Notes under the pieces: model-generated | Told to the model about the DNA's origin: nothing | Database searches by the model: none | Seen by the model: only the letters and a program-made list of their open reading frames with translations | Part shown: positions 4,645 to 26,311 of the stretch, piece after piece | Layout of the letters: every line of letters begins with the position of its first letter | Position numbering within the stretch: position 1 is the first letter of the stretch | Sequence record: OP079919.1 | Reading direction: 5' to 3' (one strand) | DNA: 64,000 bases | Position numbers and translations under genes: made by a program

Positions 4645-4761
4645 ATGAATATCATAATGCCATTAAAGCTACTCGGAGGGTTACTTATCCTGGGAGTGGG
4701 TTTTGGATTACTGGTTTATCTCATTGTTAAACTCTCCGTTAAAATGGCGTATAAAAAATGA
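4645..4761 (+). CDS. 38-aa membrane peptide (not in ORF track)
   Basis: AGGAG SD, MNIIMPLKLLGGLLILGVGFGLLVYLIVKLSVKMAYKK, ATGA overlap with next gene. Confidence 0.7.
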   Translation: MNIIMPLKLLGGLLILGVGFGLLVYLIVKLSVKMAYKK

Positions 4762-6034: not shown

Positions 6035-6045
6035 CCCCCCCCCCC
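6035..6045. repeat. C11 homopolymer
   Basis: Direct count; intergenic, in AT-rich DNA. Confidence 0.9.
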
Positions 6046-9692: not shown

Positions 9693-10046
9693 ATGAAGAA
9701 AATGAGTACATTTCTGTTAGTTGTATCCGGCTGGTTCGCTCTGTCTATTATCTGTGTCGCTGGCTACTCCTTCGTAAGAGAGGGGTGGAAAAAAGAAGAT
9801 CTCTCTTGGTCGGAGTTTATTAAACAAAGCACGATCTGCGCTAACGTCATTAAAGACAAAGCGGCGCATAAACCTCACGATGTGACTCTGGGGGATTTCT
9901 TAAGCTCCGAAGAAGTTAAACCCTGGTTAAAAGGTTTTGACTACGACGTTGAAGAGAAAACCGATTCTTACGTTATTACGTTGAGAACCCCGGCGCACGC
10001 AAGAGATTTCCTGTTACCACGACAGTTGTTTCCTAATGCCGCATAA
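9693..10046 (+). CDS. Membrane-anchored or secreted hypothetical protein
   Basis: N-terminal hydrophobic helix. Confidence 0.7.
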   Translation: MKKMSTFLLVVSGWFALSIICVAGYSFVREGWKKEDLSWSEFIKQSTICANVIKDKAAHKPHDVTLGDFLSSEEVKPWLKGFDYDVEEKTDSYVITLRTPAHARDFLLPRQLFPNAA

Positions 10047-10049
10047 AAC

Positions 10050-10083
10050 AGTATAGTCCATCCCCTAGGGGATGGACTATACT
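10050..10083. terminator. Perfect 34-bp palindrome before the TSP array
   Basis: AGTATAGTCCATCCCCT-AGGGGATGGACTATACT; long T-tract downstream. Confidence 0.75.
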
Positions 10084-10112
10084 CAACATTTCATTTTTTT
10101 TTTCACTAACGA

Positions 10113-10120
10113 ATTTTATG
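10113..10120 (+). promoter_or_regulatory. Candidate late promoter motif ATTTTATG before TSP1
   Basis: Same octamer precedes TSP3, TSP6 and TSP9; TATG is the phiKZ late consensus. Confidence 0.4.
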
Positions 10121-10195
10121 CTTTGAAAACCGAGTATGTGGGACGCCGCATAAACGTAATCATACATGTATGCTTATTGGTGAATAGAGGACGCT

Positions 10196-12076
10196 ATGAC
10201 CACACCAACTCAACTACCGATACCCAGTAGCAATTTGCTGGATTCGAGATTTAACTTTGAGAAGTTAGACCAGATAGTAAACTCAGATGCCGATTTCTAT
10301 TTGGACCGTTTTGGCAAACAACGTCTTACCGTTTTGGGCGCCACCAATCAGCTCATCCAAAGCCTGAAAGATCAAACTGGTGCCAACAATGTAACCTACG
10401 TCAAATCCAAGGTGGATAAAGTACTGTCATCGATAGGGTATTCCCTTGACGTCATTCCAATGAATATCTTTGACAAGGCTTATTTGTGTTCGGGAACTGA
10501 CAACCCAGATCCTAATACTTGGATCTGGACCGCCGCCCTGCAGGGCGTTTTATCGGATATCGCTTCTTATAAGCTTTTTACCCTCAACGGAAATGACTAT
10601 TATACAACTTTCTCCCTACGAATACCTGGAGGGGTTTATCAGATCGACGATCTGGTTAGTTTGGGTAAGGTAGCAGGGACTGGAGGAGGAGCATCCTTTA
10701 GGACCAACATCGTTATCAACGGAGATGGAAAAAGCAGTTCGGTTCTTCGTCTTATAGGTGATGATAAACAATTGTTTAAATTCACAGAAAGCCGTTTAGT
10801 CATGAGGGATATAGGGCTTCAAACTAACGGGGCTCGTAACATAGGGATGGAATTAGGCGATCAAAATAATTGGGTCCCGATGGCCCACTCCCATCTTGAC
10901 AATGTTTCGATTACCGGATTTTGTCGCGGATTGCTAATAAGCCATTGCTTTGACAGCACGTTCGATTCTTTATTCATATCCGAGATAGCCGATACGGGTA
11001 ATGCGGTTATACCCGCTACCGGTATTGAAATTGCGCAGTTTTTAGGAAAAGATTCCTCTAACAATCCAGATAACTCTAACCAACTGACGTTTATTAACTG
11101 TGTAGTTGAGACGGCTAGGACCGATAACGCTATTTTGTTTTACGTCAACGGAATTAGTAAAAGTTATCCCCACCACGCCATCAACTTCTTAGGTGGGCAC
11201 CTGGAAACCCATAGACGGAACACGGTCTGTTATAAATTTAACAACATGGCCCTGTCAACCTTCACAGGAGTGACATTCAGTCAGAACGGCACTGATTCTA
11301 CTAACCCTGTAAACGTTGGGGTAATAACTGACTCCTGGAATATTATCTTTAATGGCGGAAGAACAGTAACCAATAATGCTAAAAACACTTACGATGATAC
11401 TTGGGATAAATTGATAACCGTAGCGGGATCTAGCATGGGGATCACGTACATGAATCATCATTTTATTACCCCATACCAGACGTATTCTTCGTATAACCGT
11501 AATGCCAACACCGTGTTCAATTTTACCGGGGCGACCGCGGGAATAAACGCCATCGATGCCGATCGCTGTAGATTGAACGACTTCACGTTCAAGCCGTTCA
11601 CCAAATCTATAGAAATAACCAGAATGGATTTGATTACTCAGCGTTTCAGGATATCCGTAAACACTTCTGGTAGTCTGGTTTTCGCGTACTCTAATGATGT
11701 TACTGGCGCCGCCGCTATGACGGATTTGGTAACCATCACCAATACAGGGAATGCGACTTTTCTTGGGTCCGTTACGGCAACTAACGTAACCGGGACGTCC
11801 GATGAGAGGTTAAAAACAGAAATAGGAGAAGTTGATCAAGTTTTAATTGATGTTGTTAAAAGTCTACGGCCTAAGAAGTATCGACTGAAAAACGACCCCC
11901 AAAACAAAATTAGAGTGGGATTCATCGCCCAAGACCTAATAGAACTTATGGATAAAGCTGGATTGGATTTCAAGAAATACAGTATTATCGCAGAGTTTAA
12001 TATTCCTGGGGATGATTCAGAAAACACGTATTATTCCTTGGACTATGATGAAATAATGTTGTTAAGATCCTTGTAG
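10196..12076 (+). CDS. Tailspike/depolymerase TSP1 with C-terminal peptidase S74 intramolecular chaperone
   Basis: Shared anchor (PTQ..IPSS..D.RFN.EKLDQIVNSD...DRFG..RLT), beta-helix-like core, TSDERLKTEI...GFIAQDL. Confidence 0.85.
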   Translation: MTTPTQLPIPSSNLLDSRFNFEKLDQIVNSDADFYLDRFGKQRLTVLGATNQLIQSLKDQTGANNVTYVKSKVDKVLSSIGYSLDVIPMNIFDKAYLCSGTDNPDPNTWIWTAALQGVLSDIASYKLFTLNGNDYYTTFSLRIPGGVYQIDDLVSLGKVAGTGGGASFRTNIVINGDGKSSSVLRLIGDDKQLFKFTESRLVMRDIGLQTNGARNIGMELGDQNNWVPMAHSHLDNVSITGFCRGLLISHCFDSTFDSLFISEIADTGNAVIPATGIEIAQFLGKDSSNNPDNSNQLTFINCVVETARTDNAILFYVNGISKSYPHHAINFLGGHLETHRRNTVCYKFNNMALSTFTGVTFSQNGTDSTNPVNVGVITDSWNIIFNGGRTVTNNAKNTYDDTWDKLITVAGSSMGITYMNHHFITPYQTYSSYNRNANTVFNFTGATAGINAIDADRCRLNDFTFKPFTKSIEITRMDLITQRFRISVNTSGSLVFAYSNDVTGAAAMTDLVTITNTGNATFLGSVTATNVTGTSDERLKTEIGEVDQVLIDVVKSLRPKKYRLKNDPQNKIRVGFIAQDLIELMDKAGLDFKKYSIIAEFNIPGDDSENTYYSLDYDEIMLLRSL

Positions 12077-12082
12077 TTTGGG

Positions 12083-12153
12083 AAATTGGGGGCGTATTTT
12101 TAACTAACGTACCATAACGTCCCCCCCCCACTCCAATTTAGTCAAACAAAGGG
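12083..12153 (+). promoter_or_regulatory. Conserved intergenic stem element, copy 1 (TSP1-TSP2)
   Basis: AATTGGGG...TTTTTAACNAACNTACCAT...CCAATT-AGTCAAANAAAGGG; contains C9. Confidence 0.6.
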
Positions 12154-12157
12154 TGTT

Positions 12158-14299
12158 ATGATGACGACTCCAACTAAGAACGACATTCCAAGCAATAATT
12201 TGTTGGATGCTCGTTTTAACTTTGAAAAGCTCGATCAGATTGTTAATAGCGACGCGAACTATTACCTTGATCGATTTGGTAAACAACGACTCACTTCGGC
12301 CGGATTGGAAGATTTAGCCAGACGATTATCTGAAGATTATGAATCCACCCTATCTAATCAGGATGGGTATAAGAAAATGGGGATGGTGTCTGATTTTACT
12401 ACTCTCAGAACTATCGCCCCAACAATGGAAGGTCAACGCATTCTGCTCAGGTCGGTTGACGCTGGTTCGAATAATGGATCGGGAGAGTTTATAGGACATT
12501 TAGGGAGCAATGGGGTTGACGACGGGGTTAATGTCGCGGTGGGATCCAACTTCTATTGGGAGAGGCTTTCGACTGATTTTGTTAAATCTTCTTCTATAGG
12601 TGATTACACTCGGATTAACTCCTTTATTTCAGCCGGAAATAAGAAGATCACTGTCGATGCCGATCTCAGCGGGTGGCTTAACGTCAAAAGTAACACCACG
12701 ATAACTTTTAACCCATTGTGTCGGCTGATACCTGATACCGATGACAAAGTCGGCATAAGTATTAGAGGAGCCGCCCCAACCTCCTATGTTAATCTAGCTA
12801 CTGATGCATTAGGGATAGATGGCTCAATTACCACCACTAATGACGTTTTTAACATTGGTGATTGGCTGGAAATTAGATCCAACAAGGTTCTTCCCGGCGC
12901 GAATTTTTATCAGGTTAAGCAATCTGTTTTACGCAAAGTGCTTCGTAAAACACAAAATGGAAATGGAACTTGGACATACCGTCTCCACAGTAGTTTAGGT
13001 TATAACTTTAACGTCAGCGACGGTGCTTCCGCTGGGGTTGCGACAGTATTGGAAAATATTGTTATCGATGGGGCTAACTTAAATAAAGACAATTTCACCA
13101 ATATCTTCACCATAGGGATAAACTGTTATTACGTTTATAACCTCACTATAAAAAATATCAACCTATTCGGAACAAAAGTAAAGGATTCTGCCTCAGACAC
13201 TCCAGGAAGATCCGGAATAAAACTGTATAATTGCGTTAACGTTAGAATCGATAATGTGAACGCCTCTTATATAGGGTGGTATGGTGTAGAGGTTATGGGA
13301 TGCAGTGAAAACGTAGATGTAAATCGTTTATACGGTGTGGATTGTCGACATACCGTTTCCATGAACTGGATCGAATCTGGCGACCTTTATGGTGGGCCTA
13401 TGTGGGTTTCGGTAAGGAACTCAGCAAGTCACGCTGCAAGATTAAGTGGGTTTGACACTCATGATCTAGGAAAGGGGATCGCATTTATTAATTGCCAGAG
13501 TTTCGATTCTGGTGATGATGGATTCCAAGTAAGGGCGATGGACACCGTTCTAATCGATTGCCATGCTGAAGGATCGACACTTGATGGCTTCGGCGGCGCT
13601 ACTGGCGCAAAGAACAGCAAATTAGTAAACTGTTCTTTCAACTACAACGTCAGATACGGAATTAATTTAGGTTATGAAGGCGGTATTGTTATCGACTGTG
13701 ACGTCGATAATAACGGTTACATGGGGATTTGTACCATCGGCGGACTCATTCAAGGAGGGTCGGTCACCAATAATTATCCGGCTGCTATCGATATAGGCGC
13801 CGGATTTAATGCCGCCCAAACCGATCTCAAAATCGATGGTGTTAGAATGCCCTCTTCGACCGCCCAGACAAAAATTTTGAGTTTTGCTGGTGACGCGGTA
13901 GCCGCTAACAACAAACCTGAGTTGGTTAGAATGGAAAATTGTTACGTTCCTGGTTACGGAAGAGATTGGGTCAGACTGGTATCGTTCACCGTCCAACCTT
14001 TACCCCCGGTGCTTAATAATAATCTACTTACTTCCAGCTTAACCTCCCCTGGAAAAATAAGCGGGCAAGTCCAATTATCTGCAGGGACAGCCACGGTGAC
14101 AACCACAGAGGTTTTCTCACAACTTGGTAGCGGTGCAAATGTTTTAAAATACTCATCGCAGATTAAGTTGAAACCTATCGCTCGTTCTGCCAATATAGGC
14201 GCTCATTATGTTTCAGCAATCAACAACGGGACGTCCTTTGTAATCAATTCAACCAATTCCTCGGATGGCTCGACCATTTATTGGGAAATAACACTTTAA
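12158..14299 (+). CDS. Tailspike/depolymerase TSP2 (pectate-lyase-like beta-helix)
   Basis: Shared anchor, TSP1/Gp66-type domain (EGQRILL..GSGEFIG..DDG..YWER), parallel beta-helix repeats. Confidence 0.85.
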   Translation: MMTTPTKNDIPSNNLLDARFNFEKLDQIVNSDANYYLDRFGKQRLTSAGLEDLARRLSEDYESTLSNQDGYKKMGMVSDFTTLRTIAPTMEGQRILLRSVDAGSNNGSGEFIGHLGSNGVDDGVNVAVGSNFYWERLSTDFVKSSSIGDYTRINSFISAGNKKITVDADLSGWLNVKSNTTITFNPLCRLIPDTDDKVGISIRGAAPTSYVNLATDALGIDGSITTTNDVFNIGDWLEIRSNKVLPGANFYQVKQSVLRKVLRKTQNGNGTWTYRLHSSLGYNFNVSDGASAGVATVLENIVIDGANLNKDNFTNIFTIGINCYYVYNLTIKNINLFGTKVKDSASDTPGRSGIKLYNCVNVRIDNVNASYIGWYGVEVMGCSENVDVNRLYGVDCRHTVSMNWIESGDLYGGPMWVSVRNSASHAARLSGFDTHDLGKGIAFINCQSFDSGDDGFQVRAMDTVLIDCHAEGSTLDGFGGATGAKNSKLVNCSFNYNVRYGINLGYEGGIVIDCDVDNNGYMGICTIGGLIQGGSVTNNYPAAIDIGAGFNAAQTDLKIDGVRMPSSTAQTKILSFAGDAVAANNKPELVRMENCYVPGYGRDWVRLVSFTVQPLPPVLNNNLLTSSLTSPGKISGQVQLSAGTATVTTTEVFSQLGSGANVLKYSSQIKLKPIARSANIGAHYVSAINNGTSFVINSTNSSDGSTIYWEITL

Positions 14300-14356
14300 C
14301 CTTTGCTGGATGGTGATTGGTCGACGCCGGTCTAAAACTAATTTGTTAGGGTCATT

Positions 14357-14392
14357 TAAAATCCAACCGGTCTTAAGACCGGTTGGATTTTA
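14357..14392. terminator. Perfect 36-bp palindrome between TSP2 and TSP3
   Basis: TAAAATCCAACCGGTCTT-AAGACCGGTTGGATTTTA. Confidence 0.75.
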
Positions 14393-14394
14393 TG
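14387..14394 (+). promoter_or_regulatory. Candidate late promoter motif before TSP3
   Basis: ATTTTATGCT. Confidence 0.4.
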
Positions 14395-14433
14395 CTTACC
14401 GATATTTCAACCTTCCTGACCCGAGGAATAGCA

Positions 14434-16665
14434 ATGACTTTACCAACGCAAAAACCTATTCCGAGTTCATCCATAACTGATCAATTATTTAATGCCGAAA
14501 AGATAGATCAGGTTGTTAACTCGGATGAACTAGAATATTCCGATCGTTTCGGAAAGAAACGATTCACCTTTTCAGGATTATACAACGTTGTACAGAATTG
14601 GATCAGCAGTTTGGGGTCAAGTTCCGGGGCGTCAGCTGTAGGTCTTAGCCAGGGCGGTACGGTTCAGGCCGGTCTCTACAACGTTGTTAATGTCGAACAA
14701 TTCGCTTATCTCAATACTTCAGATGATGATTGGGGTCCGGCTTTTAGAGGGGCCAGGGATAAAGCAATCGAGATATCTGCTCCGGTCGTTACTTTTAAAG
14801 GTCAGTACAAAATAAAAGTAAGCTCCGGTCCGACCACTCACACCCTGCCTTTCGACGACGGAACTTACGATACAAGAAGAACTGGCGAAGTTTTACTTTC
14901 TCCAGAAACCTTGAATACAATGCCTGTAGGATTGGAATGGCCTTCCGGACTCTCCCTTAAATCAGACGGGATCGGAAATAACTCAATTACTTTCGATTGG
15001 GATAATGCCACTGTTGGGCTGTCTCAGGGGATTGGTATCTGCATCAGGGTCAGAAACTGGGACGGAACTTATCTTGCTAAGGCCGGGTCAGTTAATCGCA
15101 TGAATAGCGATATAGCCAATGTGGAGTTTGATGGGTTTAGCGTAAATAATGCCTTTATCGGAATACTGGCCGACGGTATCGTGGGATCAGTCAGTTGGGG
15201 CAGTCTCCAGTTTAAGAAATGTTTCTTACCTATGACTTGGCAGGGCGCCGACAGATGCACGATTAAGAAACTGAGATTTACAGATTGTCCTACCGGATTC
15301 TCGGTAGGTGGATGGTGGCTGACCCGTAACGACATATCAGGATCCAATACCGGATTGGGGGTCCCGCCTTACATTGCAGGAACCGACGTGTACTGCATCG
15401 GATGGATGGACTTCGTTAAAATTGAATCTCTGGAGTACTCTAATAGTACTTCGTTTGACAATTCCCCGTTGTTTGCCGCGGTAGATACTTTCTTCGACAC
15501 CTATTTCTACAAAAGCGCGAACAGCGCTAGAACTGCTAGTGGTGGTCGATGCACTAATACAGGCCCTAACCTAACTAGCGCGAGTACGTTAGCGGCAGAT
15601 TCTCCGTTCTTAGGTATCGCCGGGCGCGCTCACTCACAAATGGGGCGTTACCACCGAAATCACATCTTGAATGAAATTATTTCTCTCAAGACGTGGGGAT
15701 GTTTCAGGGCATCAGTCCTTACCACTGCTAATGGAAACTCGGAGCTCAACGTCCCGGGGTGCATAGTGGGTACCGCGTACATCGAACAGGCCTGTAAGGT
15801 CACGGTTGGCGGTGACGCCACGGTGGGGGGAAGTAATGACTTCGTTACATCAGGTAAAGATGTTTGGAAAGGGACAAAAACTTATTCTAAGTATTATGCT
15901 GGTGAAGGATCCGTAATCGTTAAAGATGGATGGTCTGTTAATAGTTTGGGGTTGTTCCCGTCAGCGCGGACTGTTGCAAGAAATGATAATGGGTATAATA
16001 ACAGACTAAGAAGAACAATTGTCGACGATGGCACAGGGAAACCGGTCATACTCGAACAGCTTTCTGAAACGGTCTATGCGACCCCTCCTCAGAAATTTAT
16101 TCCTAACGCCGTGGGTTCAGTAGACGACAAATATTACTGGGTTCAACTAGAAAAGAACGTCTCTTCAAAGGCTACTATTTATTCTGGTGTTCCAACGACG
16201 GCGGCGCAAACACCTATAACCTCTCCGGCCATTAAAGTAATAATGGAACGTTTAGGTAACAGAGTTAAATTAAAAATTAATTTGGATGCGTCAAATTACG
16301 CAGCCGGCGGCAGTAATCCGGTGGTAATCGGATTTACTGGGGTCTATAAACCTATTCTTACTGCAAGTCCCGATTACGCCCTTGGGGCGTACGGTCCGGT
16401 GAGACCCATAATGGTCAGCACCAAAACATTTACAGTTACCGATTCTACTTCAGTGAGTCGGACGTTTAGGATCGAGCCGGTCGCGCATCAAGCTGGGGTA
16501 TTCACTGATGGCGGCGGGGTTAATAATTACTACTTTGTTTTGCTCACCCAGCATCATACTTCTGACACTAATAGACTGTTGTGGTCGGATTTCACCGGTT
16601 CGTTATGTCAGATAGAAATAGAATATGATACGAATGACGCTATCACTTCATCCAGCGTATTTTAA
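14434..16665 (+). CDS. Tailspike/depolymerase TSP3
   Basis: Start moved from 14383 to the ATG after GAGGA; shared anchor, DDWGPAF entry, beta-rich body. Confidence 0.8.
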   Translation: MTLPTQKPIPSSSITDQLFNAEKIDQVVNSDELEYSDRFGKKRFTFSGLYNVVQNWISSLGSSSGASAVGLSQGGTVQAGLYNVVNVEQFAYLNTSDDDWGPAFRGARDKAIEISAPVVTFKGQYKIKVSSGPTTHTLPFDDGTYDTRRTGEVLLSPETLNTMPVGLEWPSGLSLKSDGIGNNSITFDWDNATVGLSQGIGICIRVRNWDGTYLAKAGSVNRMNSDIANVEFDGFSVNNAFIGILADGIVGSVSWGSLQFKKCFLPMTWQGADRCTIKKLRFTDCPTGFSVGGWWLTRNDISGSNTGLGVPPYIAGTDVYCIGWMDFVKIESLEYSNSTSFDNSPLFAAVDTFFDTYFYKSANSARTASGGRCTNTGPNLTSASTLAADSPFLGIAGRAHSQMGRYHRNHILNEIISLKTWGCFRASVLTTANGNSELNVPGCIVGTAYIEQACKVTVGGDATVGGSNDFVTSGKDVWKGTKTYSKYYAGEGSVIVKDGWSVNSLGLFPSARTVARNDNGYNNRLRRTIVDDGTGKPVILEQLSETVYATPPQKFIPNAVGSVDDKYYWVQLEKNVSSKATIYSGVPTTAAQTPITSPAIKVIMERLGNRVKLKINLDASNYAAGGSNPVVIGFTGVYKPILTASPDYALGAYGPVRPIMVSTKTFTVTDSTSVSRTFRIEPVAHQAGVFTDGGGVNNYYFVLLTQHHTSDTNRLLWSDFTGSLCQIEIEYDTNDAITSSSVF

Positions 16666-16680
16666 CATTTAAGGTGTGAT

Positions 16681-18441
16681 ATGACGCTCCCAACTCAAAA
16701 CGCTGTTCCTAGTTCAGCTAAGAACGACCAGCTCTTTAATGCTGAAAAAATAGATCAGGTCGTCAATAGTGACGACCTCCAGTACACAGATCGCTTCGGT
16801 AAGAAGCGATTTACTTTCTCTGGTTTATACAACATAATCCAAACATGGGTTGCGAGTTTAAGTGATACCACCGGAGCAGGATCGGTCGGGATCGCGCAAG
16901 GGGGGTACATCCAGCAATCTCTTTTGGAAGTGACACCGATGATGCAAGGTGCCGTAGGAGACGGCGTCGCTGATGACTCACAGGCGTTGATCAAAACATT
17001 TACTACTGCTAAAACACTTGGATTGCGGGTTAAAATAGATCGCGCTTATCTTTGCTCCTCAGCGCTTGCCGTTTCTGGACCGCTATACTTAGAAGGAATC
17101 AACCCGGAAACAGGAAAAATTATTTTTACAAATAAAGATGACTTCGGTCTTTACATTACTCAGATCAAATCCACAGACTTCATAACCATAAAAAATATCA
17201 GCATTACGGCCGGAGCTAAAATCGTTAATCCAAAGGGCCTCCTAACCATCGACGGAAGCTCTCAATTAACAACTGATCAGTCGGCAGGCAAATACCTCTT
17301 AGCAGATAGGACAATCCGCCGCGGGCTGTTGGATAATGTTAATCTCGATTGCCTTAGTGGGAACTACGCGGTTAACTACCTTAACATTATTTCATGGATG
17401 AATTATTCCGTTAGAAACATATTGATAAGAGGGTCAAGGGACAACCTGTCGGCGCTCACTAATGGAATACTTTTAAACGGCGATGGTTTCCCCGTCGACA
17501 TCCACATGACCGACCTTTTGATGTATAACCTAGGTCGGGCTATTAACTCCGTGGATTACGTGGAAGGACTCCACATTTCAGAGTTTGAATTTGTAAACGT
17601 TTTAAGGGGGATTAGCGCCGATTACGACTCAAATTATTCCAAACTCAGCTCATCGGTATGCGGATGTTACGGACCTATGATTCACACGGGTCATGTAAAC
17701 CTGGGAACGATGACTGGCGCTGACTCATGCATTTACATTAAAAATACTGTCACTCCTCGTATCAAAGATCTTTTGCTTTTCAATAGCGCCGGCGCTGCCG
17801 TCACAAACAGTTACGGGGTTTACGTTTACGGATCAACCAGCGGTGGGGAAATATCCAGCGTTTATGTTGCGGGTGGTGGTGCCGCCAACACGAAGACCAA
17901 TAATTATTCAATTAGAGTATATGGCGCCAATGGATTAAACATCAAGGACTGTACCGGAAGCTATGCGGGAGCCGTAGTGTATCTTGAAGGGGTTTCCACT
18001 AACTGTGTCATATCAGGAAATAGTGGTATCAGCACCACTAACGTCGTTTATATTTTCAGTGCCAATAACGCCAACAATAAAATAACTTCTGATAACTCGG
18101 GAATAGGAATCACGGATAAGGTGGTCGGCGGAGATCCTAGCGGGTCTTATGTGGAACCTCTAATCTGGCAGAGGAAGTACACACTGAATTTAGCCGCGGC
18201 CAAAGATGCCGGGACGTCTTTCACTTTTAACGTCCCGATTCCCGGGGGAAATTTTGGTGTTGCTCCAGATGCCGCTTTCGCGACATTACCCTCCAATCTT
18301 ATCGGACAATTTTCATATAACCCTTCGGCCAGTTCAGCAACAAGTCTGAATGTAACCATTTATTTTATCTCGGCCGCAGCCATAGGGAGTTACGATATTT
18401 TAATTTCGGCAGCTGGTTTTGGCGTAAGCAGAACGCAATAA
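16681..18441 (+). CDS. Tailspike/depolymerase TSP4
   Basis: Shared anchor, GAVGDGVADDSQAL pectate-lyase-3-type start. Confidence 0.85.
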   Translation: MTLPTQNAVPSSAKNDQLFNAEKIDQVVNSDDLQYTDRFGKKRFTFSGLYNIIQTWVASLSDTTGAGSVGIAQGGYIQQSLLEVTPMMQGAVGDGVADDSQALIKTFTTAKTLGLRVKIDRAYLCSSALAVSGPLYLEGINPETGKIIFTNKDDFGLYITQIKSTDFITIKNISITAGAKIVNPKGLLTIDGSSQLTTDQSAGKYLLADRTIRRGLLDNVNLDCLSGNYAVNYLNIISWMNYSVRNILIRGSRDNLSALTNGILLNGDGFPVDIHMTDLLMYNLGRAINSVDYVEGLHISEFEFVNVLRGISADYDSNYSKLSSSVCGCYGPMIHTGHVNLGTMTGADSCIYIKNTVTPRIKDLLLFNSAGAAVTNSYGVYVYGSTSGGEISSVYVAGGGAANTKTNNYSIRVYGANGLNIKDCTGSYAGAVVYLEGVSTNCVISGNSGISTTNVVYIFSANNANNKITSDNSGIGITDKVVGGDPSGSYVEPLIWQRKYTLNLAAAKDAGTSFTFNVPIPGGNFGVAPDAAFATLPSNLIGQFSYNPSASSATSLNVTIYFISAAAIGSYDILISAAGFGVSRTQ

Positions 18442-18554
18442 TCTTTTAGTATTTAATAGATTGAGGGCGTGTAATCGATAATAACTGAGGGATGATGATT
18501 AAATTTATATTACGTCGACTTCATCCCAGATTGATCGTCATTTAGGAGTTTTCA

Positions 18555-20696
18555 ATGACACAGCCAACTCAGAATCCTATTCCCAGTGGGAATATACTGG
18601 ATCAGATTTTTAACGCAGAAAAGATAGATGAAGTTGTCAACAGTGGCAGCGAGCAATATACGGATAGGCTGGGAGTTAAAAGATTCACTATAGCCGGACT
18701 CACTGCTTTAGTCAGAAATTTGATCAATTCGATATCGGGGAATACTGGCGGAGGGAACGTAGGATTAGCTAATGATGAAATGCTTCAGTCTTATTTGGAT
18801 AAGTACGAAAATGCGTCATGCTCGATCTTCAAGTTCCTTTCCCCAGAAGAAGCTAGAAATGCGAATTTAAAACTTCTCGTCAATATAGACCAGGCAGTTG
18901 CCTCCGCAGCCGATGCTGGCGTGAGTTCCATTAAACTCCCACCCGGACACTTTGAGTTTAATACCACCACAATGCTTTATAATGTTTGTATTGTGGGTAG
19001 TAATGAATCAGAAGCCCCAGATCTTCAACTCGAAGCGACAGATGGCTCTTCAGGGAAGTTATCACTGAATACCAAAGGTACCGTATTGCACCTTACTGGT
19101 AATTCCGCAGCAAATGGCATCACCTTTAATACGAATACCCCGTCGTCTTCTGTAGTTGGGGTAAGCCGTTGTTCTGTTTATTATCCCGATCAAGACTGGG
19201 CCAACTGGTCAGTGGGAGGGACAGATATAGATGGCGTGACTTATTATCAGCCGACGGTGTACCCGGCGGCGTTTATAATAAACGGTGGAATGCGGGCTTT
19301 CTTCGATAAAGTCTTTTTTATCAACGCATATCAATGGATAGAAATAAGAGACACCCAAATACCGATGATCGGTAAGATAGCGGGAACCCTCATCAATCGT
19401 GGTGTTCAGATCACACGTATGGGAGCGGGAGGATACACGGATACGGTTAACTCCTATCCTTTCTGGACATGGGCTTGTGGGTTTAGGGGTAACTCCATGC
19501 GAGCCAACCTGTACCAAACCTTTAAGGGAATTTGTTATGAGGTAGGTAACGATGACGGAACGACGCGAACTGTAGAACAGATGCTGATTAATCGTCTTAA
19601 CGTTATCGGGTGTGCGGACGGACTCATTTGTGGTGGAAAGGGCGTGACGCTCAATAGCGCTAAATTCGATAACTGTATGCGAGCCATCACGGTTAACAGT
19701 TTGGATAATTCTGCTTACCACAGTTTCAGCAATGTCTGGGCGTCGTGTTATTACAATAACAATTATGTGTTTAAACAGAGAACTGATGGGAGCGTTTACG
19801 TTTTCTCTACGAATAGTTCGACCCCTGTAAATATTAATAATTTTAATGTTGTAAGATCCGACGGTATAGGGATAAACATGCCGTATGCCTCTGGGTCAAA
19901 CATCAGTAATGTGGTCATTCAACAATTGGGTTGGAAAGGGTTTGTTTTGGGTTCTGCCGGAAGAAGCACAGACGTGTTGAATGTTAACACGTGTAATGTG
20001 AACTTTTATACCGGGGATTCGGCTTTAACCCAGATAGGTTATGAGATTGGCGATTTTGTAAGATGCTCGATTAAAGGACTGCAGTACAAAGGTGGGAGTA
20101 ACGTAACGCCTTACGTCATGACAGGGACATTGAATCCGTACGAATCCGGCAAAGAAATAGATTTAAGTTCTCTCGACGGCCCGCTTTATAAAGGGGTAAG
20201 CCAGTCTATCGTTTCTGTTATTCGTGGGAGAATACGCCGTCTTGTGGGGGTAACAGCAAGTTCTACAGACAGTGTTCTCGTGACATCGTTATCGGGGACT
20301 AATACCGGCGGTACAGCTTTAAACTGCGGCGTGGGTGTAAGAAACACGGTATCAACCGGAAATGGCCATGGGGTGTTAGTACTTTATTCGTCTAAGGCGG
20401 GAGAGCTCGTTGAGACAGCAGAAGTTTTTAACGACGGAGCCGTTTTAGGGGTCAGGCCGCGATCAACAACTGCCGTGCTAGGAGATACGAGTAACCCTTG
20501 GAATTCGGCGGATATAAAAACCATCAGGGCGACCTCGTCGATTACACTTAACGGCAATCCAGTTGGGGTTAAAGTTAGTGTGCCGGCGTCAGCTACCGCC
20601 ACTGGAGTGGTAGGTCAGTGGGCGGCCGATACGACCTATATCTATATTTGTGTGGCCACCAATACTTGGGTGAGGGCCAGTTTAGCAACCTGGTAA
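18555..20696 (+). CDS. Tailspike/depolymerase TSP5
   Basis: Shared anchor, IKLPPGHF, beta-helix, tail-fibre-type end GQWAAD..YIYICVATNTW.R. Confidence 0.85.
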   Translation: MTQPTQNPIPSGNILDQIFNAEKIDEVVNSGSEQYTDRLGVKRFTIAGLTALVRNLINSISGNTGGGNVGLANDEMLQSYLDKYENASCSIFKFLSPEEARNANLKLLVNIDQAVASAADAGVSSIKLPPGHFEFNTTTMLYNVCIVGSNESEAPDLQLEATDGSSGKLSLNTKGTVLHLTGNSAANGITFNTNTPSSSVVGVSRCSVYYPDQDWANWSVGGTDIDGVTYYQPTVYPAAFIINGGMRAFFDKVFFINAYQWIEIRDTQIPMIGKIAGTLINRGVQITRMGAGGYTDTVNSYPFWTWACGFRGNSMRANLYQTFKGICYEVGNDDGTTRTVEQMLINRLNVIGCADGLICGGKGVTLNSAKFDNCMRAITVNSLDNSAYHSFSNVWASCYYNNNYVFKQRTDGSVYVFSTNSSTPVNINNFNVVRSDGIGINMPYASGSNISNVVIQQLGWKGFVLGSAGRSTDVLNVNTCNVNFYTGDSALTQIGYEIGDFVRCSIKGLQYKGGSNVTPYVMTGTLNPYESGKEIDLSSLDGPLYKGVSQSIVSVIRGRIRRLVGVTASSTDSVLVTSLSGTNTGGTALNCGVGVRNTVSTGNGHGVLVLYSSKAGELVETAEVFNDGAVLGVRPRSTTAVLGDTSNPWNSADIKTIRATSSITLNGNPVGVKVSVPASATATGVVGQWAADTTYIYICVATNTWVRASLATW

Positions 20697-20700
20697 TAAT

Positions 20701-20738
20701 TATTACTCCTTCTCCGGTTAACCGGAGAAGGAGTAATA
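20701..20738. terminator. Perfect 38-bp TACTCC-family palindrome between TSP5 and TSP6
   Basis: TATTACTCCTTCTCCGGTT-AACCGGAGAAGGAGTAATA. Confidence 0.75.
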
Positions 20739-20748
20739 GATACGTCCG

Positions 20749-20756
20749 ATTTTATG
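20749..20756 (+). promoter_or_regulatory. Candidate late promoter motif before TSP6
   Basis: ATTTTATGCT. Confidence 0.4.
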
Positions 20757-20821
20757 CTGATCTAAATTCAGTAGACTTGCGCAAGTCTTTTATACTACAT
20801 TCTTTTTAAAGGAGTAACCTC

Positions 20822-22711: not shown

Positions 22712-22719
22712 TGGTGAGC

Positions 22720-22749
22720 TAGGGGAGGGGGCGCCCTCCTCCCTTATTT
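22720..22749 (+). terminator. GC-rich hairpin between TSP6 and TSP7
   Basis: AGGGGAGG...CCTCC(T)CCCCT followed by TATTT. Confidence 0.6.
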
Positions 22750-22764
22750 ATGAGGTTTCTAAAA

Positions 22765-24480
22765 ATGACCACGCCTACCAATAATGACATTCCGAGCAGT
22801 TCGGTACAAGATAGGTTGTATAACGCCGAGAAATTTGATGAATTCATGAATTCATCGAACACTAATTTCACTGATCGCAAAGGAGTTTCACGATGGACAC
22901 TAAGCGGAATCAGAACTGTTATAAGTAACTGGATGACGAGTCTGAGTAGCAATGCAGGCGGAAACACCATAAAGGTCGATAATGCGCTACTACCAGACTT
23001 GGACTATGCGCCGAGCATTTTTAGATTTATGACCGACGCAGATATCGATTCGATGAAGAACACTCTGGGTAGCGAAGTTCCTGTCGATTACGCCTTACAA
23101 GCAGTTATCGATGCCGGTTATAAGTCAGTCAGATTCCCCCACAACGTTAAGGGCATCTATATTCTTTCTGGGTTGGTAACACTCCCTTCAGCCTTCACAA
23201 TCTTTGGAACGTGTTCCAAACCATATAGTAGTATTACCGACTCTTCCTTCTTAAATAAAGGGGTGACTTTACGTAAAGCCGTCGGGGCGGATTATCTGTT
23301 CGGAGCCGGTTCGGTATTCAGAATTTATGGGTGTAATCTAGATGGAAGAGACAACCTTCGCCCTCTAATCAACCAGACCAATCAAATACGCGGCGGAATA
23401 TTAGAAGATTGCGGGATCTACCGTTTTCTTTATGGAGTCGGGAGTTATGGTTACACCTCTATTGTTGTTAAACGATCATCCATTTGTTCAAATAACATAG
23501 GAATAAGGAACCTTATCGACAGCCGTATTATGGACGTTACCCTCAATGCCAATAAAGGTAACGGGGTCGATAACCAGGTCGGGGCCAATAATAATATTTT
23601 TGAAAACGTCAGGAATGAATGGAATGAAGGGATAGGGTATTATTTTTATGGGTCGGTGGGGAACATCATTACTGGTGAACTTATTGATAGATCTGGTTCG
23701 GCCAATGTTGTCGTCCTGGCCGGTGGATCCGCATTGATTTCAGGGGTTATCTCCCAACGACCCGCTCGTACGTTGAGTGAGGACTCAAGTTATAACACTC
23801 ATTTCTATGTGGCCGGAAGTAAATCAAAACTTTGTTTATCCGGTGTAACTACGGCAACGGGCATTGACGACGGGGGTACCGGAACTTTAACGCCACAAAG
23901 GACAATCGTGATAGGCGGGACGAATACCGACGTGACCGTTCTTTCTAGCGGGTGCGATTTATCGGGAAGTATTCTCTCGCCGTTAAGATTCGACGTTACT
24001 CCAGCTACGGTAGGATTTAGAAACAATATTGGCGTTGACGACTGGGTTAACACCGGGCAATATCAGTTCATCAAAGGAAGAGCGTCGATCGGTAGTCAGA
24101 AAAATGCGGTGATCTTGGCCAGTGGTGTGGGGAGTACCGCGACGTTAGTTTTTGATAACACAGGGTTCGTCGACCCCACTTCTAATTTCCCCGATATACC
24201 TAAGAAACGAAAAATTATCATAGAAAGCATGACTTCGGTATCGGCTTCCAGAACTGTAGGTTTTTATGAAGTTTCGTTATTGACCAGGCGTTTCTCTAGC
24301 ACTGCCGGTTTTGATGTCTTACAGGAAACATCTTATCCTGCTGGAGCGTGGGCGCGGACTACCGCAACTGGTGTTTCTATAAACATTGCCCTCTCAGCGG
24401 ACGCCAAACAGATAACAGTTACGCTAACCAACGTAGATGGCGTCGGAAGATTTATAGATGCTGCTCTTAAGTGGGATTAA
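22765..24480 (+). CDS. Tailspike/depolymerase TSP7
   Basis: ATG after GAGG; variant anchor (DRLYNAEKFDEFMNS..TDRKG.SRWTL), beta-helix with NNN.F.NVRNEWN. Confidence 0.85.
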   Translation: MTTPTNNDIPSSSVQDRLYNAEKFDEFMNSSNTNFTDRKGVSRWTLSGIRTVISNWMTSLSSNAGGNTIKVDNALLPDLDYAPSIFRFMTDADIDSMKNTLGSEVPVDYALQAVIDAGYKSVRFPHNVKGIYILSGLVTLPSAFTIFGTCSKPYSSITDSSFLNKGVTLRKAVGADYLFGAGSVFRIYGCNLDGRDNLRPLINQTNQIRGGILEDCGIYRFLYGVGSYGYTSIVVKRSSICSNNIGIRNLIDSRIMDVTLNANKGNGVDNQVGANNNIFENVRNEWNEGIGYYFYGSVGNIITGELIDRSGSANVVVLAGGSALISGVISQRPARTLSEDSSYNTHFYVAGSKSKLCLSGVTTATGIDDGGTGTLTPQRTIVIGGTNTDVTVLSSGCDLSGSILSPLRFDVTPATVGFRNNIGVDDWVNTGQYQFIKGRASIGSQKNAVILASGVGSTATLVFDNTGFVDPTSNFPDIPKKRKIIIESMTSVSASRTVGFYEVSLLTRRFSSTAGFDVLQETSYPAGAWARTTATGVSINIALSADAKQITVTLTNVDGVGRFIDAALKWD

Positions 24481-24505
24481 GTAGCTAAATTCCTTATTAG
24501 TAGTG

Positions 24506-24573
24506 GAATTGGGGTGTTTTTAACCAACTTACCATTGTCTTTTGCCTCCACCCCAATTCAGTCAAATAAAGGG
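24506..24573 (+). promoter_or_regulatory. Conserved intergenic stem element, copy 2 (TSP7-TSP8)
   Basis: 11-bp stem GAATTGGGGTG/CACCCCAATTC; same loop and 3' motifs as copy 1. Confidence 0.6.
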
Positions 24574-24577
24574 TTCA

Positions 24578-26311
24578 ATGATGACCGCACCGACTAATAA
24601 CAATGTACCGAGTAGCTCGGTTCAAGACAGATTGTACAATGCTGAAAAATTCGATGAATTTATGAATTCGGATAATCCCAATTATACCGATCGTAAGGGG
24701 AACTCCCGCTGGACTCTGAATGGGATAAGAATAGCCATATCCAATTGGATGACGTCATTGGGTACGTCAGTCGGGTCAGCCTATATTGGTAAAGGAAACG
24801 ATACTGTATCCAATCTTTTAGAGGCCTCCATCACTGAATATCTCACCGCTGAAGATCAAAATACACTCAGAAGTTCGTTGGGGGCGGAAGTCAATGTAGA
24901 TTATGCTTTAAAGGCAGCGATCGACGCAGGTATTCTCCGATTAAGATTCCCTAGGATGATAGGGATTTATGTTCTGGGCGCCGACCCTGTTACCCTTCCA
25001 ATAGGCTTTTCTATGGTCGGGGATAGAACCAGGTTATATACAGCGCCTTCCGATTCTACCTTTCTTAACAAGGGTACTGTGCTAAGATTAAGTTCCGGAG
25101 CCTCTTCGCTGTTCTTGTTAACTCAAAAGCATCAGTTTAGCGGAATTAATTTCGATGGCCGTGATAAAACGGTTAACTTAATGAAAGGAGCGGACCAAAC
25201 TCAATTCTGTAGGTTCTATAATTGCGGAATCCATCGATGGTTAAACGGATTGGGCGGATCTTCTTCAGGCGGATATACGGCTACACTTTCAGTATCTTTT
25301 TGTGATATTTCTGGAAATTATCGGGGCGTGCGTAATCTTATCGATTCCAAAATATCGGATAGTACCATTAACGCCAATGACACCAATGGGGTCGAACTTA
25401 ACGTAGGCGCCAATAACAACGTCTTTATTAATGTCAGAAACGAATGGAACAATGGCGTTAACTACTACGGGTATGGGGGTAAGCGCAACATCGTCGTCGG
25501 GGAGCTATGCGATCGAGCCGGACTCAACGGAATTGTTGCTGCGGGAGGCGCCCAGTGGTCCCTCGAAGGAGTGAATGTGCAGCGTTCGGGCAGGCTCGCC
25601 ACCCAGGGATCTGTCGACGACGCCCATTTCTATGTGACTGGTGAAGGATCATCTATCATAATGAGCGGAGTTTACACAACTCAAGGCTCTGACGATACAG
25701 GGGGTGGGAGAGTCTCCCCGTCGTACACTCTGGCTGGTGGAGGAAATTCATCTGACACGAAAACATTCTCGGCCGTGAACAGCGTCTTGAGCGGATTTGG
25801 GGTTTCAGCGATAAGACCTGGGTCCTCCACTTTCTCTAATATGAGCGTTGTGGGTTGTAACGGCTTTTACGATAGAATATCCGGAAACACAATAAATTTC
25901 TACGAAGGAAACTTCTCTTTGGGGAAAAGGGCTTCGTCGTTGAGTTTAAGTGGAACGGGTTCTACGGCACAGATCACATTCCCTACAACAGACTCGTTTC
26001 CGCAATACAGGGTGGGTTTTACCAGACAGTTGCATATAACAGCTAGGAACAACATCAATACGGGATCGGTCGCTTATTACAACGTCCCGCTATTCTTTTA
26101 TAGAGAACAATCGACCGCCGTTGTGCGAGCGAATACAAGTAAAGAAGAAACAATGGTGACCCTCAGCGGAGGAACTTGGGGTTTAACCGCGGCGTCCCCG
26201 ACCGGGGTCGCTATTGACCTGGCGGTTTCTTCTGATGGCCTGACGTTAACCGTAACGCTGACAGCCATCGATAACTCATCAAGAATCATTGATGTGGAAC
26301 TGAGGGCTTAA
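24578..26311 (+). CDS. Tailspike/depolymerase TSP8 (paralog of TSP7)
   Basis: Start moved to ATG after AAAGGG; same anchor subtype and core motifs as TSP7. Confidence 0.85.
   Translation: MMTAPTNNNVPSSSVQDRLYNAEKFDEFMNSDNPNYTDRKGNSRWTLNGIRIAISNWMTSLGTSVGSAYIGKGNDTVSNLLEASITEYLTAEDQNTLRSSLGAEVNVDYALKAAIDAGILRLRFPRMIGIYVLGADPVTLPIGFSMVGDRTRLYTAPSDSTFLNKGTVLRLSSGASSLFLLTQKHQFSGINFDGRDKTVNLMKGADQTQFCRFYNCGIHRWLNGLGGSSSGGYTATLSVSFCDISGNYRGVRNLIDSKISDSTINANDTNGVELNVGANNNVFINVRNEWNNGVNYYGYGGKRNIVVGELCDRAGLNGIVAAGGAQWSLEGVNVQRSGRLATQGSVDDAHFYVTGEGSSIIMSGVYTTQGSDDTGGGRVSPSYTLAGGGNSSDTKTFSAVNSVLSGFGVSAIRPGSSTFSNMSVVGCNGFYDRISGNTINFYEGNFSLGKRASSLSLSGTGSTAQITFPTTDSFPQYRVGFTRQLHITARNNINTGSVAYYNVPLFFYREQSTAVVRANTSKEETMVTLSGGTWGLTAASPTGVAIDLAVSSDGLTLTVTLTAIDNSSRIIDVELRA

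What the first reader, a model, noticed from the sequence alone, without database searches (positions are those of the whole stretch)
12077..12160. Conserved ~70-nt intergenic stem element inside two tailspike pairs (second copy 24500-24583)
Seen: the TSP1-2 and TSP7-8 spacers, 12 kb apart, align as AATTGGGG / TTTTTAAC-AAC-TACCAT / CCAATT / AGTCAAA-AAAGGG / ATGATG, although the flanking coding DNA is diverged. The G-rich and C-rich arms pair (about 9 and 11 bp), with a compensatory outer pair (A-T versus G-C) around a conserved loop. In copy 1 the G-tract can alternatively pair with ACGTCCCC. Inference: a cis-element that sets expression of the second spike in a pair (processing site, protein-binding hairpin or switch), or a recombination handle for swapping spike genes.
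Basis: partly seen in the sequence, partly recalled or inferred. Interest (0 to 1): 0.75.

Follow-up and report, generated by a model that had tools for sequence, protein, structure and literature searches.

The report
Conserved hairpin spacer between tailspike genes
A short spacer that folds into a hairpin recurs between neighbouring tailspike genes in a small group of giant Klebsiella phages. It is real and maintained by evolution, but it looks like an ordinary messenger-RNA hairpin that travels with shuffled spike genes, not a new kind of switch.

Summary
The window is Klebsiella phage KPN8 (256.6 kb, a nucleus-forming chimallivirus). Both spacers exist as described. Their cores are 70% identical over 88 nt, against 45 +/- 3% for random window pairs and 47-55% for the flanking coding DNA. 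With relatives fetched here the family grows to 7 intact copies and 3 decayed relics in six phage genomes or contigs. Every copy lies after a tailspike (TSP) gene; there are none elsewhere in the KPN8 genome.

The only universally conserved feature is a 9-bp outer stem (AATTGGGG / CCCCAATT). It pairs 9/9 in six intact copies. Three positions change on both sides, and the wobble pairs are mostly G-U on the sense strand.

The alternative pairing occurs only in copy 1 and its near-identical twin.

The element sits in spacers that lack the palindrome-plus-TTTATG (terminator plus putative late promoter) module bounding the spike operons. So it is probably transcribed inside a polycistronic late mRNA.

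Best reading: an intercistronic mRNA hairpin with an open leader carrying the ribosome-binding site, inherited and shuffled with spike cassettes. Loop and flank types reassort, so a T4 PeSL-like recombination role remains possible. Function is untested. Interest is moderate.

The parts
12074..12160 (+). Copy 1: the whole spacer, from the TSP1 stop codon to the base before the TSP2 start
   Evidence: The covariance model scores 104-109 bits.
12083..12091 (+). Copy 1, 5' arm of the outer stem (AAATTGGGG)
12092..12130 (+). Copy 1 interior ('T-type'). It holds the 17-nt motif at 12097-12113, the alternative-pairing partners 12088-12095 / 12117-12124, and a C9 run at 12121-12129.
   Evidence: The C run is about C20 in the near-identical copy L151.
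12131..12139 (+). Copy 1, 3' arm of the outer stem (CTCCAATTT; one G-U pair)
12140..12160 (+). Copy 1 A-rich leader with the Shine-Dalgarno-like AAAGGG (12148-12153). The first ATG (12158) is probably not the start.
24478..24580 (+). Copy 2: the whole spacer, from the TSP7 stop codon to the base before the TSP8 start
   Evidence: The covariance model scores 99-108 bits.
24506..24516 (+). Copy 2, 5' arm (GAATTGGGGTG)
24517..24548 (+). Copy 2 interior ('T-type'; motif at 24517-24533)
24549..24559 (+). Copy 2, 3' arm (CACCCCAATTC)
24560..24580 (+). Copy 2 A-rich leader with AAAGGG (24568-24573)
10196..12076 (+). TSP1, 626 aa, with a C-terminal Peptidase_S74 chaperone domain. The 5' flank of copy 1 overlaps its last codons.
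   Evidence: It stays linked to the element in L129 and L151.
12161..14299 (+). TSP2, 712 aa, K1-capsule-lyase-like depolymerase
   Evidence: Its body equals the first spike of phiKp_32 (96% identity).
22765..24480 (+). TSP7, 571 aa (upstream of copy 2)
   Evidence: (repeat D1)
24581..26311 (+). TSP8, 576 aa (downstream of copy 2). The GenBank start (TTG at 24542) lies inside the element.
10050..10122 (+). Operon boundary before TSP1: a 34-nt perfect palindrome (10050-10083) followed by the TTTATGC motif at 10115 (putative late promoter)
   Evidence: phiKZ late promoters are T(-3)ATG(+1) (PMC7598289).
14357..14396 (+). Operon boundary after TSP2: a 36-nt perfect palindrome followed directly by TTTATGC (14389)

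Best explanation
The two spacers are paralogous copies of a lineage-restricted intercistronic module. It occurs only inside the tailspike arrays of Miami-like Klebsiella chimalliviruses.

The module consists of:
- the stop codon of one spike gene and a short conserved flank;
- a 9-13-bp stem whose arms read AATTGGGG and CCCCAATT;
- an interior that is free to vary (14-48 nt);
- an A-rich, unstructured leader carrying the ribosome-binding site and start codon of the next spike gene.

The module sits in spacers that lack the 'long palindrome + TTTATG' module bounding the spike operons. It is therefore probably transcribed within a polycistronic late mRNA.

Proposed mechanism: the sense-strand RNA hairpin acts as an intercistronic barrier. 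It could shield the 3' end of the upstream spike message, mark a stable processed end for the downstream one, or partly attenuate read-through. The next ribosome-binding site stays in an open leader. The result would be a set relative yield of two spikes made from one promoter.

The module is inherited and shuffled together with spike cassettes: upstream body, element, then the first ~70-140 nt of the next gene.

Shown: the family, its restricted location, conservation and covariation of the stem, the variable interior, and mosaic evolution. Inferred: transcription across the element and any RNA-level function.
For: Family and location:
- 7 intact copies: KPN8 x2, L151, L129, YC1 L004 9722-9803, L144 16144-16243, L150 6504-6576.
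- 3 relics. All copies follow a spike or fibre gene.
- Covariance-model searches of the whole KPN8 genome plus 15 related loci (about 560 kb) found no other copies.

Stem:
- 9/9 pairs in six intact copies and 7/9 in the seventh (L144) and in each relic.
- Three pairs change on both sides (AU/GC, GC/CG, GC/AU). Overall 91% of cells pair, against at most 58% when the partner columns are slid.
- With four sequences, 36/36 cells pair, against at most 64% when slid.
- RNAalifold on an independent MAFFT alignment predicts the same stem.
- Hairpin z-scores are -2.4, -2.9 and -4.2 for three copies.
- G-U pairs on the sense strand number four independent cases, against one A-C.

Orthologue comparison (copy 1 versus L129): coding DNA 74-86% identical, arms 8/9 and 8/9 with pairing kept, interior 47%.

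Context:
- All 39 spacers containing TTTATG have stems of at least 12 bp.
- 28 of 33 spacers of 35 nt or more without TTTATG, including all element copies, still hold a stem of at least 8 bp close to the ribosome-binding site.
- No conserved TATG lies in the element: copy 1 has TTATG, L129 has TTACG, copy 2 has CAATG.
- All three relics have lost the downstream gene. They also show a missing or degraded arm.
Against: - There are no expression or structure-probing data.
- Copy 1's own hairpin is weak. Its z-score is -0.6, and the minimum-energy fold uses the competing G-tract / C-tract pairing.
- Covariation rests on 3 of 9 pairs and few independent sequences. Shuffle controls are only moderately exceeded (16-55 of 500 for most measures, 123 of 500 for further pair types).
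- Seven of the nine pairs are nearly invariant. That could equally reflect recent common descent or sequence-specific recognition on DNA.
- The minus strand folds at least as well.
- Decay of relics is also what neutrality predicts.
- Stems of 9-13 bp with large loops are not classic RNase III substrates (own knowledge), and the 3' tail is not U-rich.
Confidence: 0.5

Rival explanations
1. DNA-level recombination module, analogous to T4-type PeSLs. The G-run / C-run inverted repeat and its conserved flanks would be preferred crossover points, or the target of a phage protein. They would promote gain, loss and exchange of spike cassettes. Conservation would then reflect this role rather than any RNA function.
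For: - Interior and 3'-flank types occur in all four combinations: T+A (copies 1 and 2), T+B (YC1 minus-strand relic), C+A (L129), C+B (L144).
- Copy 1 and its orthologue L129 share both flanks but have unrelated interiors.
- A deletion in phiKp_32 and YC1 has one end inside the element, at a 7-nt microhomology.
- The element marks the end of a unit (S74 spike, element, next N-terminal head) that occupies different positions in KPN8, L151 and L129.
- PeSL stem-loops also carry polyG/polyC tracts and mediate shuffling (PMC2839356 and PMC4122927).
Against: - All three large spike-body swaps mapped here break in the conserved N-terminal coding DNA, 70-140 nt downstream of the element, not in it.
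- The arms offer only 9-11 nt of identity.
- There are just two copies per genome, in direct orientation 12 kb apart.
- Sense-strand G-U pairs would be mismatches in the complementary-strand hairpin.
Confidence: 0.2
2. Neutral passenger. The spacer was duplicated along with spike cassettes and is simply young. The stem would be an inherited feature of an old terminator-like hairpin with no present function.
For: - The family is confined to a handful of closely related phages. Exact-pattern scans of IMG/VR, JGI metagenomes and GTDB genomes found no further copies.
- Most stem positions never vary.
- Copy 1 folds poorly.
- Other internal spacers make do with unrelated hairpins.
Against: - Between orthologues the interior has diverged to the random level, while arms and flanks are kept at or above the level of coding DNA.
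- All differences in the arms of six intact copies preserve pairing.
- The elements are more alike than the flanking coding DNA in the paralogue comparison.
Confidence: 0.15
3. Terminator plus internal promoter. The hairpin would end the upstream spike transcript, and the AT-rich interior or leader would hold a non-TATG (for example middle-class) promoter for the phage RNA polymerase. Each spike would then be its own transcription unit.
For: - The T-type interior is AT-rich and shared by four copies.
- phiKZ middle promoters have only a weak AT-rich motif (PMC7598289).
- phiKZ terminators are hairpins (PMC10914365).
Against: - The interior is not conserved. L129 and L144 have GC-rich interiors. 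YC1 and L150 have 26- and 14-nt interiors, with no room for a promoter.
- No U-rich tail follows the stem, and the terminator scan does not list it.
- The TTAT/TATG that follows bona fide boundary palindromes here and in phiKZ is missing.
Confidence: 0.08
4. Regulatory switch or operator. Alternative pairing of the G-tract, or binding of a protein to the loop, would toggle translation of the second spike.
For: - In copy 1 the G-tract can pair either with the 3' arm or with 12117-12124. The alternative is the predicted minimum-energy fold.
- The near-identical L151 keeps an alternative helix.
Against: - The alternative partner is absent from copy 2.
- In YC1 and L129 the inner helix stacks on the outer stem rather than competing with it.
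- The loop is not conserved across the family.
- No Rfam family matches.
- The hairpin ends about 19 nt before the start codon and does not occlude the ribosome-binding site.
Confidence: 0.05

Closest known systems
PeSLs (promoter-early stem-loops) of T4-type phages (Arbiol et al. 2010, PMC2839356; Comeau et al. 2014, PMC4122927)
   Same: - Short repeated intergenic cassettes in the most variable parts of a large phage genome.
- Stem-loops that often use polyG followed by polyC.
- Chimeric copies that indicate exchange between copies.
- Association with genes that are gained, lost or swapped.
   Different: - PeSLs are defined by a strong sigma-70-type early promoter next to the stem-loop, and the stem-loop is a proven terminator.
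- This element has no promoter-like site and no TATG late-promoter motif.
- It lies in a late structural operon of a phage that carries its own RNA polymerases.
- It has two copies per genome rather than dozens.
Chimallivirus terminator hairpin followed by TTAT (phiKZ motif, Putzeys et al. 2024, PMC10914365), with the T(-3)ATG(+1) late promoter (PMC7598289)
   Same: Both are G/C-tract hairpins in intergenic spacers of a nucleus-forming jumbo phage. KPN8 has clear counterparts of this module at 10050-10122, 14357-14396 and 20701-20757.
   Different: - The element's loop is 14-48 nt rather than a few bases.
- Its tail is AATT(T/C)AGTC or AATTTTAAC.
- No TTAT/TATG follows it.
Intercistronic mRNA stem-loops, such as bacterial REP elements and phage intercistronic processing or stabiliser hairpins (own knowledge, not tested here)
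   Same: An imperfect palindrome inside an operon, between two co-transcribed genes, placed just after a stop codon and ahead of the next ribosome-binding site.
   Different: - REPs occur in hundreds of copies genome-wide and are linked to RAYT transposases.
- This family is confined to one gene array.
- No processing or stabilising activity has been measured.

Membership tests
PeSL (T4-type promoter-early stem-loop cassette) | A sigma-70-like early promoter adjacent to the stem-loop | tested here: not met
   The consensus scan lists no promoter-like site in 12077-12160 or 24481-24580. The host phage is a chimallivirus with its own RNA polymerase subunits.
PeSL (T4-type promoter-early stem-loop cassette) | A stable stem-loop, often polyG...polyC | tested here: met
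   The AATTGGGG / CCCCAATT stem is present in all intact copies.
PeSL (T4-type promoter-early stem-loop cassette) | Copies flank variable genes and recombine with each other (chimeric copies) | tested here: inconclusive
   All copies lie in the spike array, and loop and flank types reassort. However, the mapped spike-body swaps break in coding DNA.
PeSL (T4-type promoter-early stem-loop cassette) | The stem-loop terminates transcription | not testable with these tools
   This needs transcript 3'-end data.
Intrinsic (factor-independent) terminator | A GC-rich hairpin with a short loop, followed directly by a U-tract | tested here: not met
   The terminator scan does not list it. Loops are 14-48 nt, and the tails contain only 2-4 U after two A.
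Chimallivirus terminator plus late-promoter module (hairpin followed by TTAT/TATG) | A hairpin followed within a few bases by TTAT(G) | tested here: not met
   The boundary palindromes at 10050, 14357, 20701 and 22722 have it. The element spacers do not, and the TATG at the start codon of copy 1 is not conserved in L129 or copy 2.
Any curated RNA family (Rfam 15) | A match to a covariance model | tested here: not met
   No hit overlaps either spacer, even at E up to 10. ARAGORN finds no tRNA or tmRNA.
REP-like repetitive extragenic palindrome | Many copies dispersed through the genome | tested here: not met
   The 256.6-kb genome holds two copies, both in the spike array.
MITE-like mobile element | Terminal inverted repeats bounded by a target-site duplication, inserted into unrelated flanks | tested here: not met
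   No direct repeat abuts the arms. Both flanks outside the arms are themselves conserved between copies, so the unit is larger than the inverted repeat.
Riboswitch-like or alternative-structure switch | Two mutually exclusive helices, both conserved | tested here: not met
   The alternative helix occurs only in copy 1 and L151.

The most novel reading that the evidence does not exclude
The AATTGGGG / CCCCAATT hairpin family could be the chimallivirus counterpart of T4 PeSLs. On this reading it is a dedicated crossover site, possibly recognised by a phage protein. It would drive the gain, loss and reshuffling of depolymerase-spike cassettes, and so host-range evolution, in nucleus-forming jumbo phages.
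Probability: 0.15. Interest if true: 0.6.

Novelty: new member of a known kind. Interest (0 to 1): 0.35.

Why it matters
Multi-spike jumbo Klebsiella phages are studied for capsule-specific host range. How eight spike genes are expressed in balance, and how cassettes move between phages, is poorly described for nucleus-forming phages, which use their own RNA polymerases.

This analysis gives three usable results:
- A two-class grammar for the spike-array spacers: a palindrome plus TTTATG at operon boundaries, and a hairpin plus open leader inside operons.
- A defined hairpin family with covariation that can be looked for in transcriptome data.
- A map showing that spike bodies are exchanged at the conserved N-terminal coding head, while the element travels with the upstream spike.

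It also corrects two probable start-codon annotations. Function is unproven, and the family is small and lineage-restricted, so this is useful but not surprising.

Tried and rejected
Searches that led nowhere:
- The first collection scan used a 17-nt loop pattern. It was too loose and returned only chance hits.
- Stricter patterns found nothing in IMG/VR, JGI metagenomes or GTDB genomes.
- The 3'-flank pattern gave three hits. The two I read (L136, L137) lack the stem and the context and are chance matches; the third (L138, a cyanobacterial genome) was not read.
- IMG/VR holds no close relative of this phage group.
- blastn with 11-nt words cannot find copy 2 using copy 1 as query, so the 'phages' search under-reports diverged copies. 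The extra copies came from reading every spacer and from protein-baited contigs.

Tests that gave no match:
- Rfam, tRNA, sigma-70 promoter and terminator scans: nothing at the element.

Ideas considered and rejected:
- A resemblance, seen by eye, between the TSP4-TSP5 spacer (18442-18554) and the 5' part of the element. Neither covariance model supports it.
- Read-through fusion of TSP1 and TSP2. They are in the same frame, 81 nt apart, but a stop follows after 8 codons.
- A late promoter in the element. TATG is not conserved.
- A MITE. There is no target-site duplication and the flanks are conserved.
- A general promoter motif. The loop motif occurs nowhere else in the window, and k-mer counting of 53 intergenic regions gave no shared motif.

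Left unexplained:
- A 21/22-nt match to the 5' flank inside the coding DNA of a spike of Raoultella phage VB_ZK_P1 (L005 6698-6719). It reads in frame.

Only the phiKZ T(-3)ATG(+1) motif and the terminator motif as printed in PMC7598289 and PMC10914365 are used in this report.
Full report
**Context**

The window is bases 62001-126000 of Klebsiella phage KPN8 (OP079919.1, 256,576 bp). KPN8 belongs with phages Miami, phiKp_32, YC1, Raoultella phage VB_ZK_P1 and 'Stenotrophomonas' phage BUCTxx100. Three facts mark it as a nucleus-forming chimallivirus:
- Miami is used as a chimallin-encoding phage in the core-genome study of nucleus-forming phages.
- KPN8 encodes split RNA polymerase beta-like subunits.
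- KPN8 encodes a tubulin-like protein.

Positions 10196-26311 hold eight co-oriented genes of 571-743 aa. They share N-terminal 'head' sequences (families D1 and D2). TSP1 carries a Peptidase_S74 chaperone domain and TSP2 carries K1-capsule-lyase domains. Calling them tailspikes or depolymerases is reasonable.

**Observation check**

Both spacers are as described.
- The cores are 62/88 (70%) identical. Random window pairs give 45 +/- 3% (maximum 53%). The upstream coding DNA is 47% identical and the downstream coding DNA 49-55%.
- The loop motif and the 3' motif occur nowhere else in the window.
- Copy 1 has a 9-bp stem with one G-U pair. Copy 2 has an 11-bp stem. The outermost pair is A-T in one and G-C in the other.
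- The alternative G-tract pairing in copy 1 exists and is its predicted minimum-energy fold.
- Whole-spacer fold energies do not differ from shuffles. The isolated hairpin is significant for copy 2 (z = -2.9) but not for copy 1 (z = -0.6).

**More copies**

I read every spacer of the spike arrays of the five relatives. I also fetched further arrays through protein baits. This enlarged the family.

Intact copies:
- KPN8 copies 1 and 2.
- L151 9909-10000 (ENA assembly). It is 97.7% identical to KPN8 from upstream of TSP1 to 139 nt into TSP2, but has about C20 where KPN8 has C9.
- L129 14718-14811 (Logan contig), an orthologue of copy 1 in a phage whose marker protein is only 58% identical.
- YC1 L004 9722-9803.
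- L144 16144-16243, in a 251-kb contig of assembly GCA_029087405.1.
- L150 6504-6576.

Relics:
- L003 and L004, about 16001-16062 (phiKp_32 and YC1). The 5' half is kept. The 3' arm, the ribosome-binding site and most of the downstream spike are deleted, at a 7-nt microhomology.
- L004 18698-18801 on the minus strand. It follows a tail-fibre gene and is itself followed by a 4-codon remnant of a spike start. Its 5' arm carries two mismatches.

Two covariance models were searched over the complete KPN8 genome and 15 related loci (about 560 kb). They found nothing else. Pattern scans of IMG/VR, JGI metagenomes and GTDB genomes added no copies.

**What is conserved**

Only the outer stem and, within subfamilies, the flanks are conserved.
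- The nine outer pairs form in 9/9 positions in six intact copies, and in 7/9 in L144 and in each relic.
- Three pairs show changes on both sides (AU/GC, GC/CG, GC/AU).
- 91% of cells pair, against at most 58% when the 3' partner is slid by 1-3 columns. Of 500 column shuffles, 16 reach the observed number of doubly changed pairs.
- On an alignment made without reference to structure, 36/36 cells pair, against at most 64% when slid. RNAalifold also predicts the same stem de novo.
- Wobble pairs are G-U on the sense strand in four independent cases, against one A-C. This hints weakly that the sense RNA is the selected molecule.

Between the orthologues (copy 1 and L129) the segments compare as follows:

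| Segment | Identity |
|---|---|
| Coding DNA | 74-86% |
| 5' arm | 8/9, pairing kept |
| 3' arm | 8/9, pairing kept |
| Leader | 82% |
| Interior | 47% (random level) |

Interiors range from 14 nt (L150) to 48 nt (L129). The alternative pairing is confined to copy 1 and L151.

**Genomic grammar**

The spike-array spacers fall into two classes.

Class 1: all 39 spacers containing TTTATG carry a stem of at least 12 bp, in most cases a near-perfect 13-18-bp palindrome.
- In the KPN8 window the stem is followed by (A)TTTTATGC at 10115, 14389 and 20751, and by TTATTTATGA at 22747.
- This matches the phiKZ pattern of a terminator hairpin followed by TTAT (PMC10914365).
- It also matches the T(-3)ATG(+1) late promoter (PMC7598289).
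- I read these spacers as terminator plus late promoter. This is an inference.

Class 2: of the 33 spacers of 35 nt or more without TTTATG, 28 still carry a stem of at least 8 bp shortly before the ribosome-binding site. The stem sequences are mostly unrelated.
- These spacers are not all independent, because some are orthologous.
- Every element copy belongs to this class.
- The element is thus one sequence family among functionally analogous internal hairpins.
- TSP2 and TSP8 most likely depend on read-through from the promoters before TSP1 and TSP7.

**Evolution**

KPN8 TSP2 is the first spike of phiKp_32 (96% identical). The junction lies about 70 nt into the conserved N-terminal coding head. 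Relative to phiKp_32, KPN8 therefore has an extra unit: TSP1 body, element, and next head.

The same unit recurs elsewhere:
- In L151, with a different downstream spike body. Homology ends 139 nt into the gene.
- In L129, where it sits at position 2 and the K1-lyase spike at position 1.

Spike bodies are therefore exchanged at the N-terminal head, and the element travels with the upstream spike.

Inside the element, interior types and 3'-flank types occur in all four combinations.
- Interior type T: copies 1 and 2, and both relic types. Interior type C: L129 and L144 (local alignment score 12, against a 99th percentile of 9).
- Flank type A: copy 1, copy 2, L129 and L151. Flank type B: YC1, L150, L144 and the minus-strand relic.
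- Copy 1 and L129 share both flanks but not the interior.

Exchanges or conversion tracts ending near the arms have therefore occurred.

**Mechanism**

I commit to an intercistronic sense-strand RNA hairpin. It would act as a barrier or stabiliser, or as a weak attenuator, and is followed by an open A-rich leader carrying the ribosome-binding site (confidence 0.5). Four observations support this:
- The stem is the only conserved feature.
- The stem stays compatible with G-U pairs.
- The element sits where a read-through transcript is expected.
- The copies that have lost the downstream gene also have a missing or degraded arm.

Rivals:

| Rival | Confidence | Main point |
|---|---|---|
| PeSL-like recombination site | 0.20 | Loop and flank types reassort |
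| Neutral passenger | 0.15 | Small, young family |
| Terminator with an internal promoter | 0.08 | Contradicted by the non-conserved and sometimes tiny interiors |
| Switch or operator | 0.05 | Alternative helix and loop are not conserved |

None can be excluded without transcript and structure data.

**Comparison with known systems, and novelty**

The nearest described system is the PeSL of T4-type phages. The element shares the polyG/polyC stem-loop, the location among variable genes and the chimeric copies. It lacks the defining promoter and the high copy number. It is not in Rfam, and two full-text literature searches on related topics turned up no description of it.

I rate it a new member of a known kind: an intercistronic or cassette-boundary hairpin. 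It is lineage-restricted and of moderate interest.

Only motifs printed in the cited papers are used here.

Noticed in passing
window 10050-10122, 14357-14396, 20701-20757, 22722-22753; homologous spacers in L002-L006, L129, L144-L152: Operon boundaries in the spike array are long, near-perfect palindromes followed by (A)TTTTATGC. Across phages the palindrome centre changes on both arms together while the TTTATGC and the downstream leader stay fixed. This looks like a terminator plus T(-3)ATG(+1) late-promoter module, as in phiKZ.
   Followed up: partly
window 10196-12299 compared with L003 2259-2393, L151 7831-10139 and L129 12836-14945: Spike bodies are exchanged with breakpoints in the conserved N-terminal coding head, 70-140 nt into the gene. 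Relative to phiKp_32, KPN8 carries an extra unit (S74 spike, element, next head). L129 has the same genes in a different order.
   Followed up: yes
window 24542 (GenBank start of KPN8_79) and window 14611 (GenBank start of KPN8_74): Both annotated starts look wrong. Conserved N-terminal homology begins at ATG 24581 and ATG 14434. The TTG at 24542 lies inside the element's interior.
   Followed up: partly
window 12121-12129; L151 about 9953-9972; window 6035-6045: The C-run in copy 1 is C9 in KPN8 but about C20 in the otherwise 97.7%-identical L151. This is either a slippage-prone tract or an assembly artefact. A second run (C11), preceded by a similar ATAAC, follows the ORF ending at 6029 and is conserved in relatives.
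   Followed up: no
L003 and L004 16001-16310; L005 17216-17572: In phiKp_32 and YC1 the last spike is reduced to a C-terminal fragment. It is joined to the 5' half of an element copy at a 7-nt microhomology. VB_ZK_P1 keeps a different, N-terminal plus C-terminal remnant of the same spike.
   Followed up: partly
L004 18698-18801, minus strand: A decayed element copy follows the minus-strand tail-fibre gene of YC1. After it come a ribosome-binding site and a 4-codon remnant of a spike start. KPN8 has only a bidirectional palindrome at the equivalent place (28615-28650).
   Followed up: partly
L005 6698-6719: A 21/22-nt match to the element's 5' flank lies in frame inside the coding DNA of the first spike of Raoultella phage VB_ZK_P1. 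Whether it is chance or a trace of the flank's origin is unknown.
   Followed up: no
window 10123-10195 and the same region in all relatives: The 5' leader of the first spike gene is almost invariant across six phages. It contains a 12-nt palindrome and a short conserved hairpin, and is more conserved than the coding DNA that follows.
   Followed up: no
window 4758-5225 (by homology to L129 5544-6011, L131 5146-5535 and L144 4374-4841); L003 22297-23433; L130 508-1647: The relatives' genes at the position corresponding to window 4758-5225 carry a precomputed Acb1 (anti-CBASS) Pfam hit. phiKp_32 and one Logan contig carry a TnpB (IS200/IS605) gene nearby. Neither was checked on the window's own protein.
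   Followed up: no
L006 (OR529409.1): A phage deposited as a Stenotrophomonas maltophilia phage (BUCTxx100) is a close relative of these Klebsiella phages, 92-97% identical in the conserved flanks. The host label seems worth checking.
   Followed up: no
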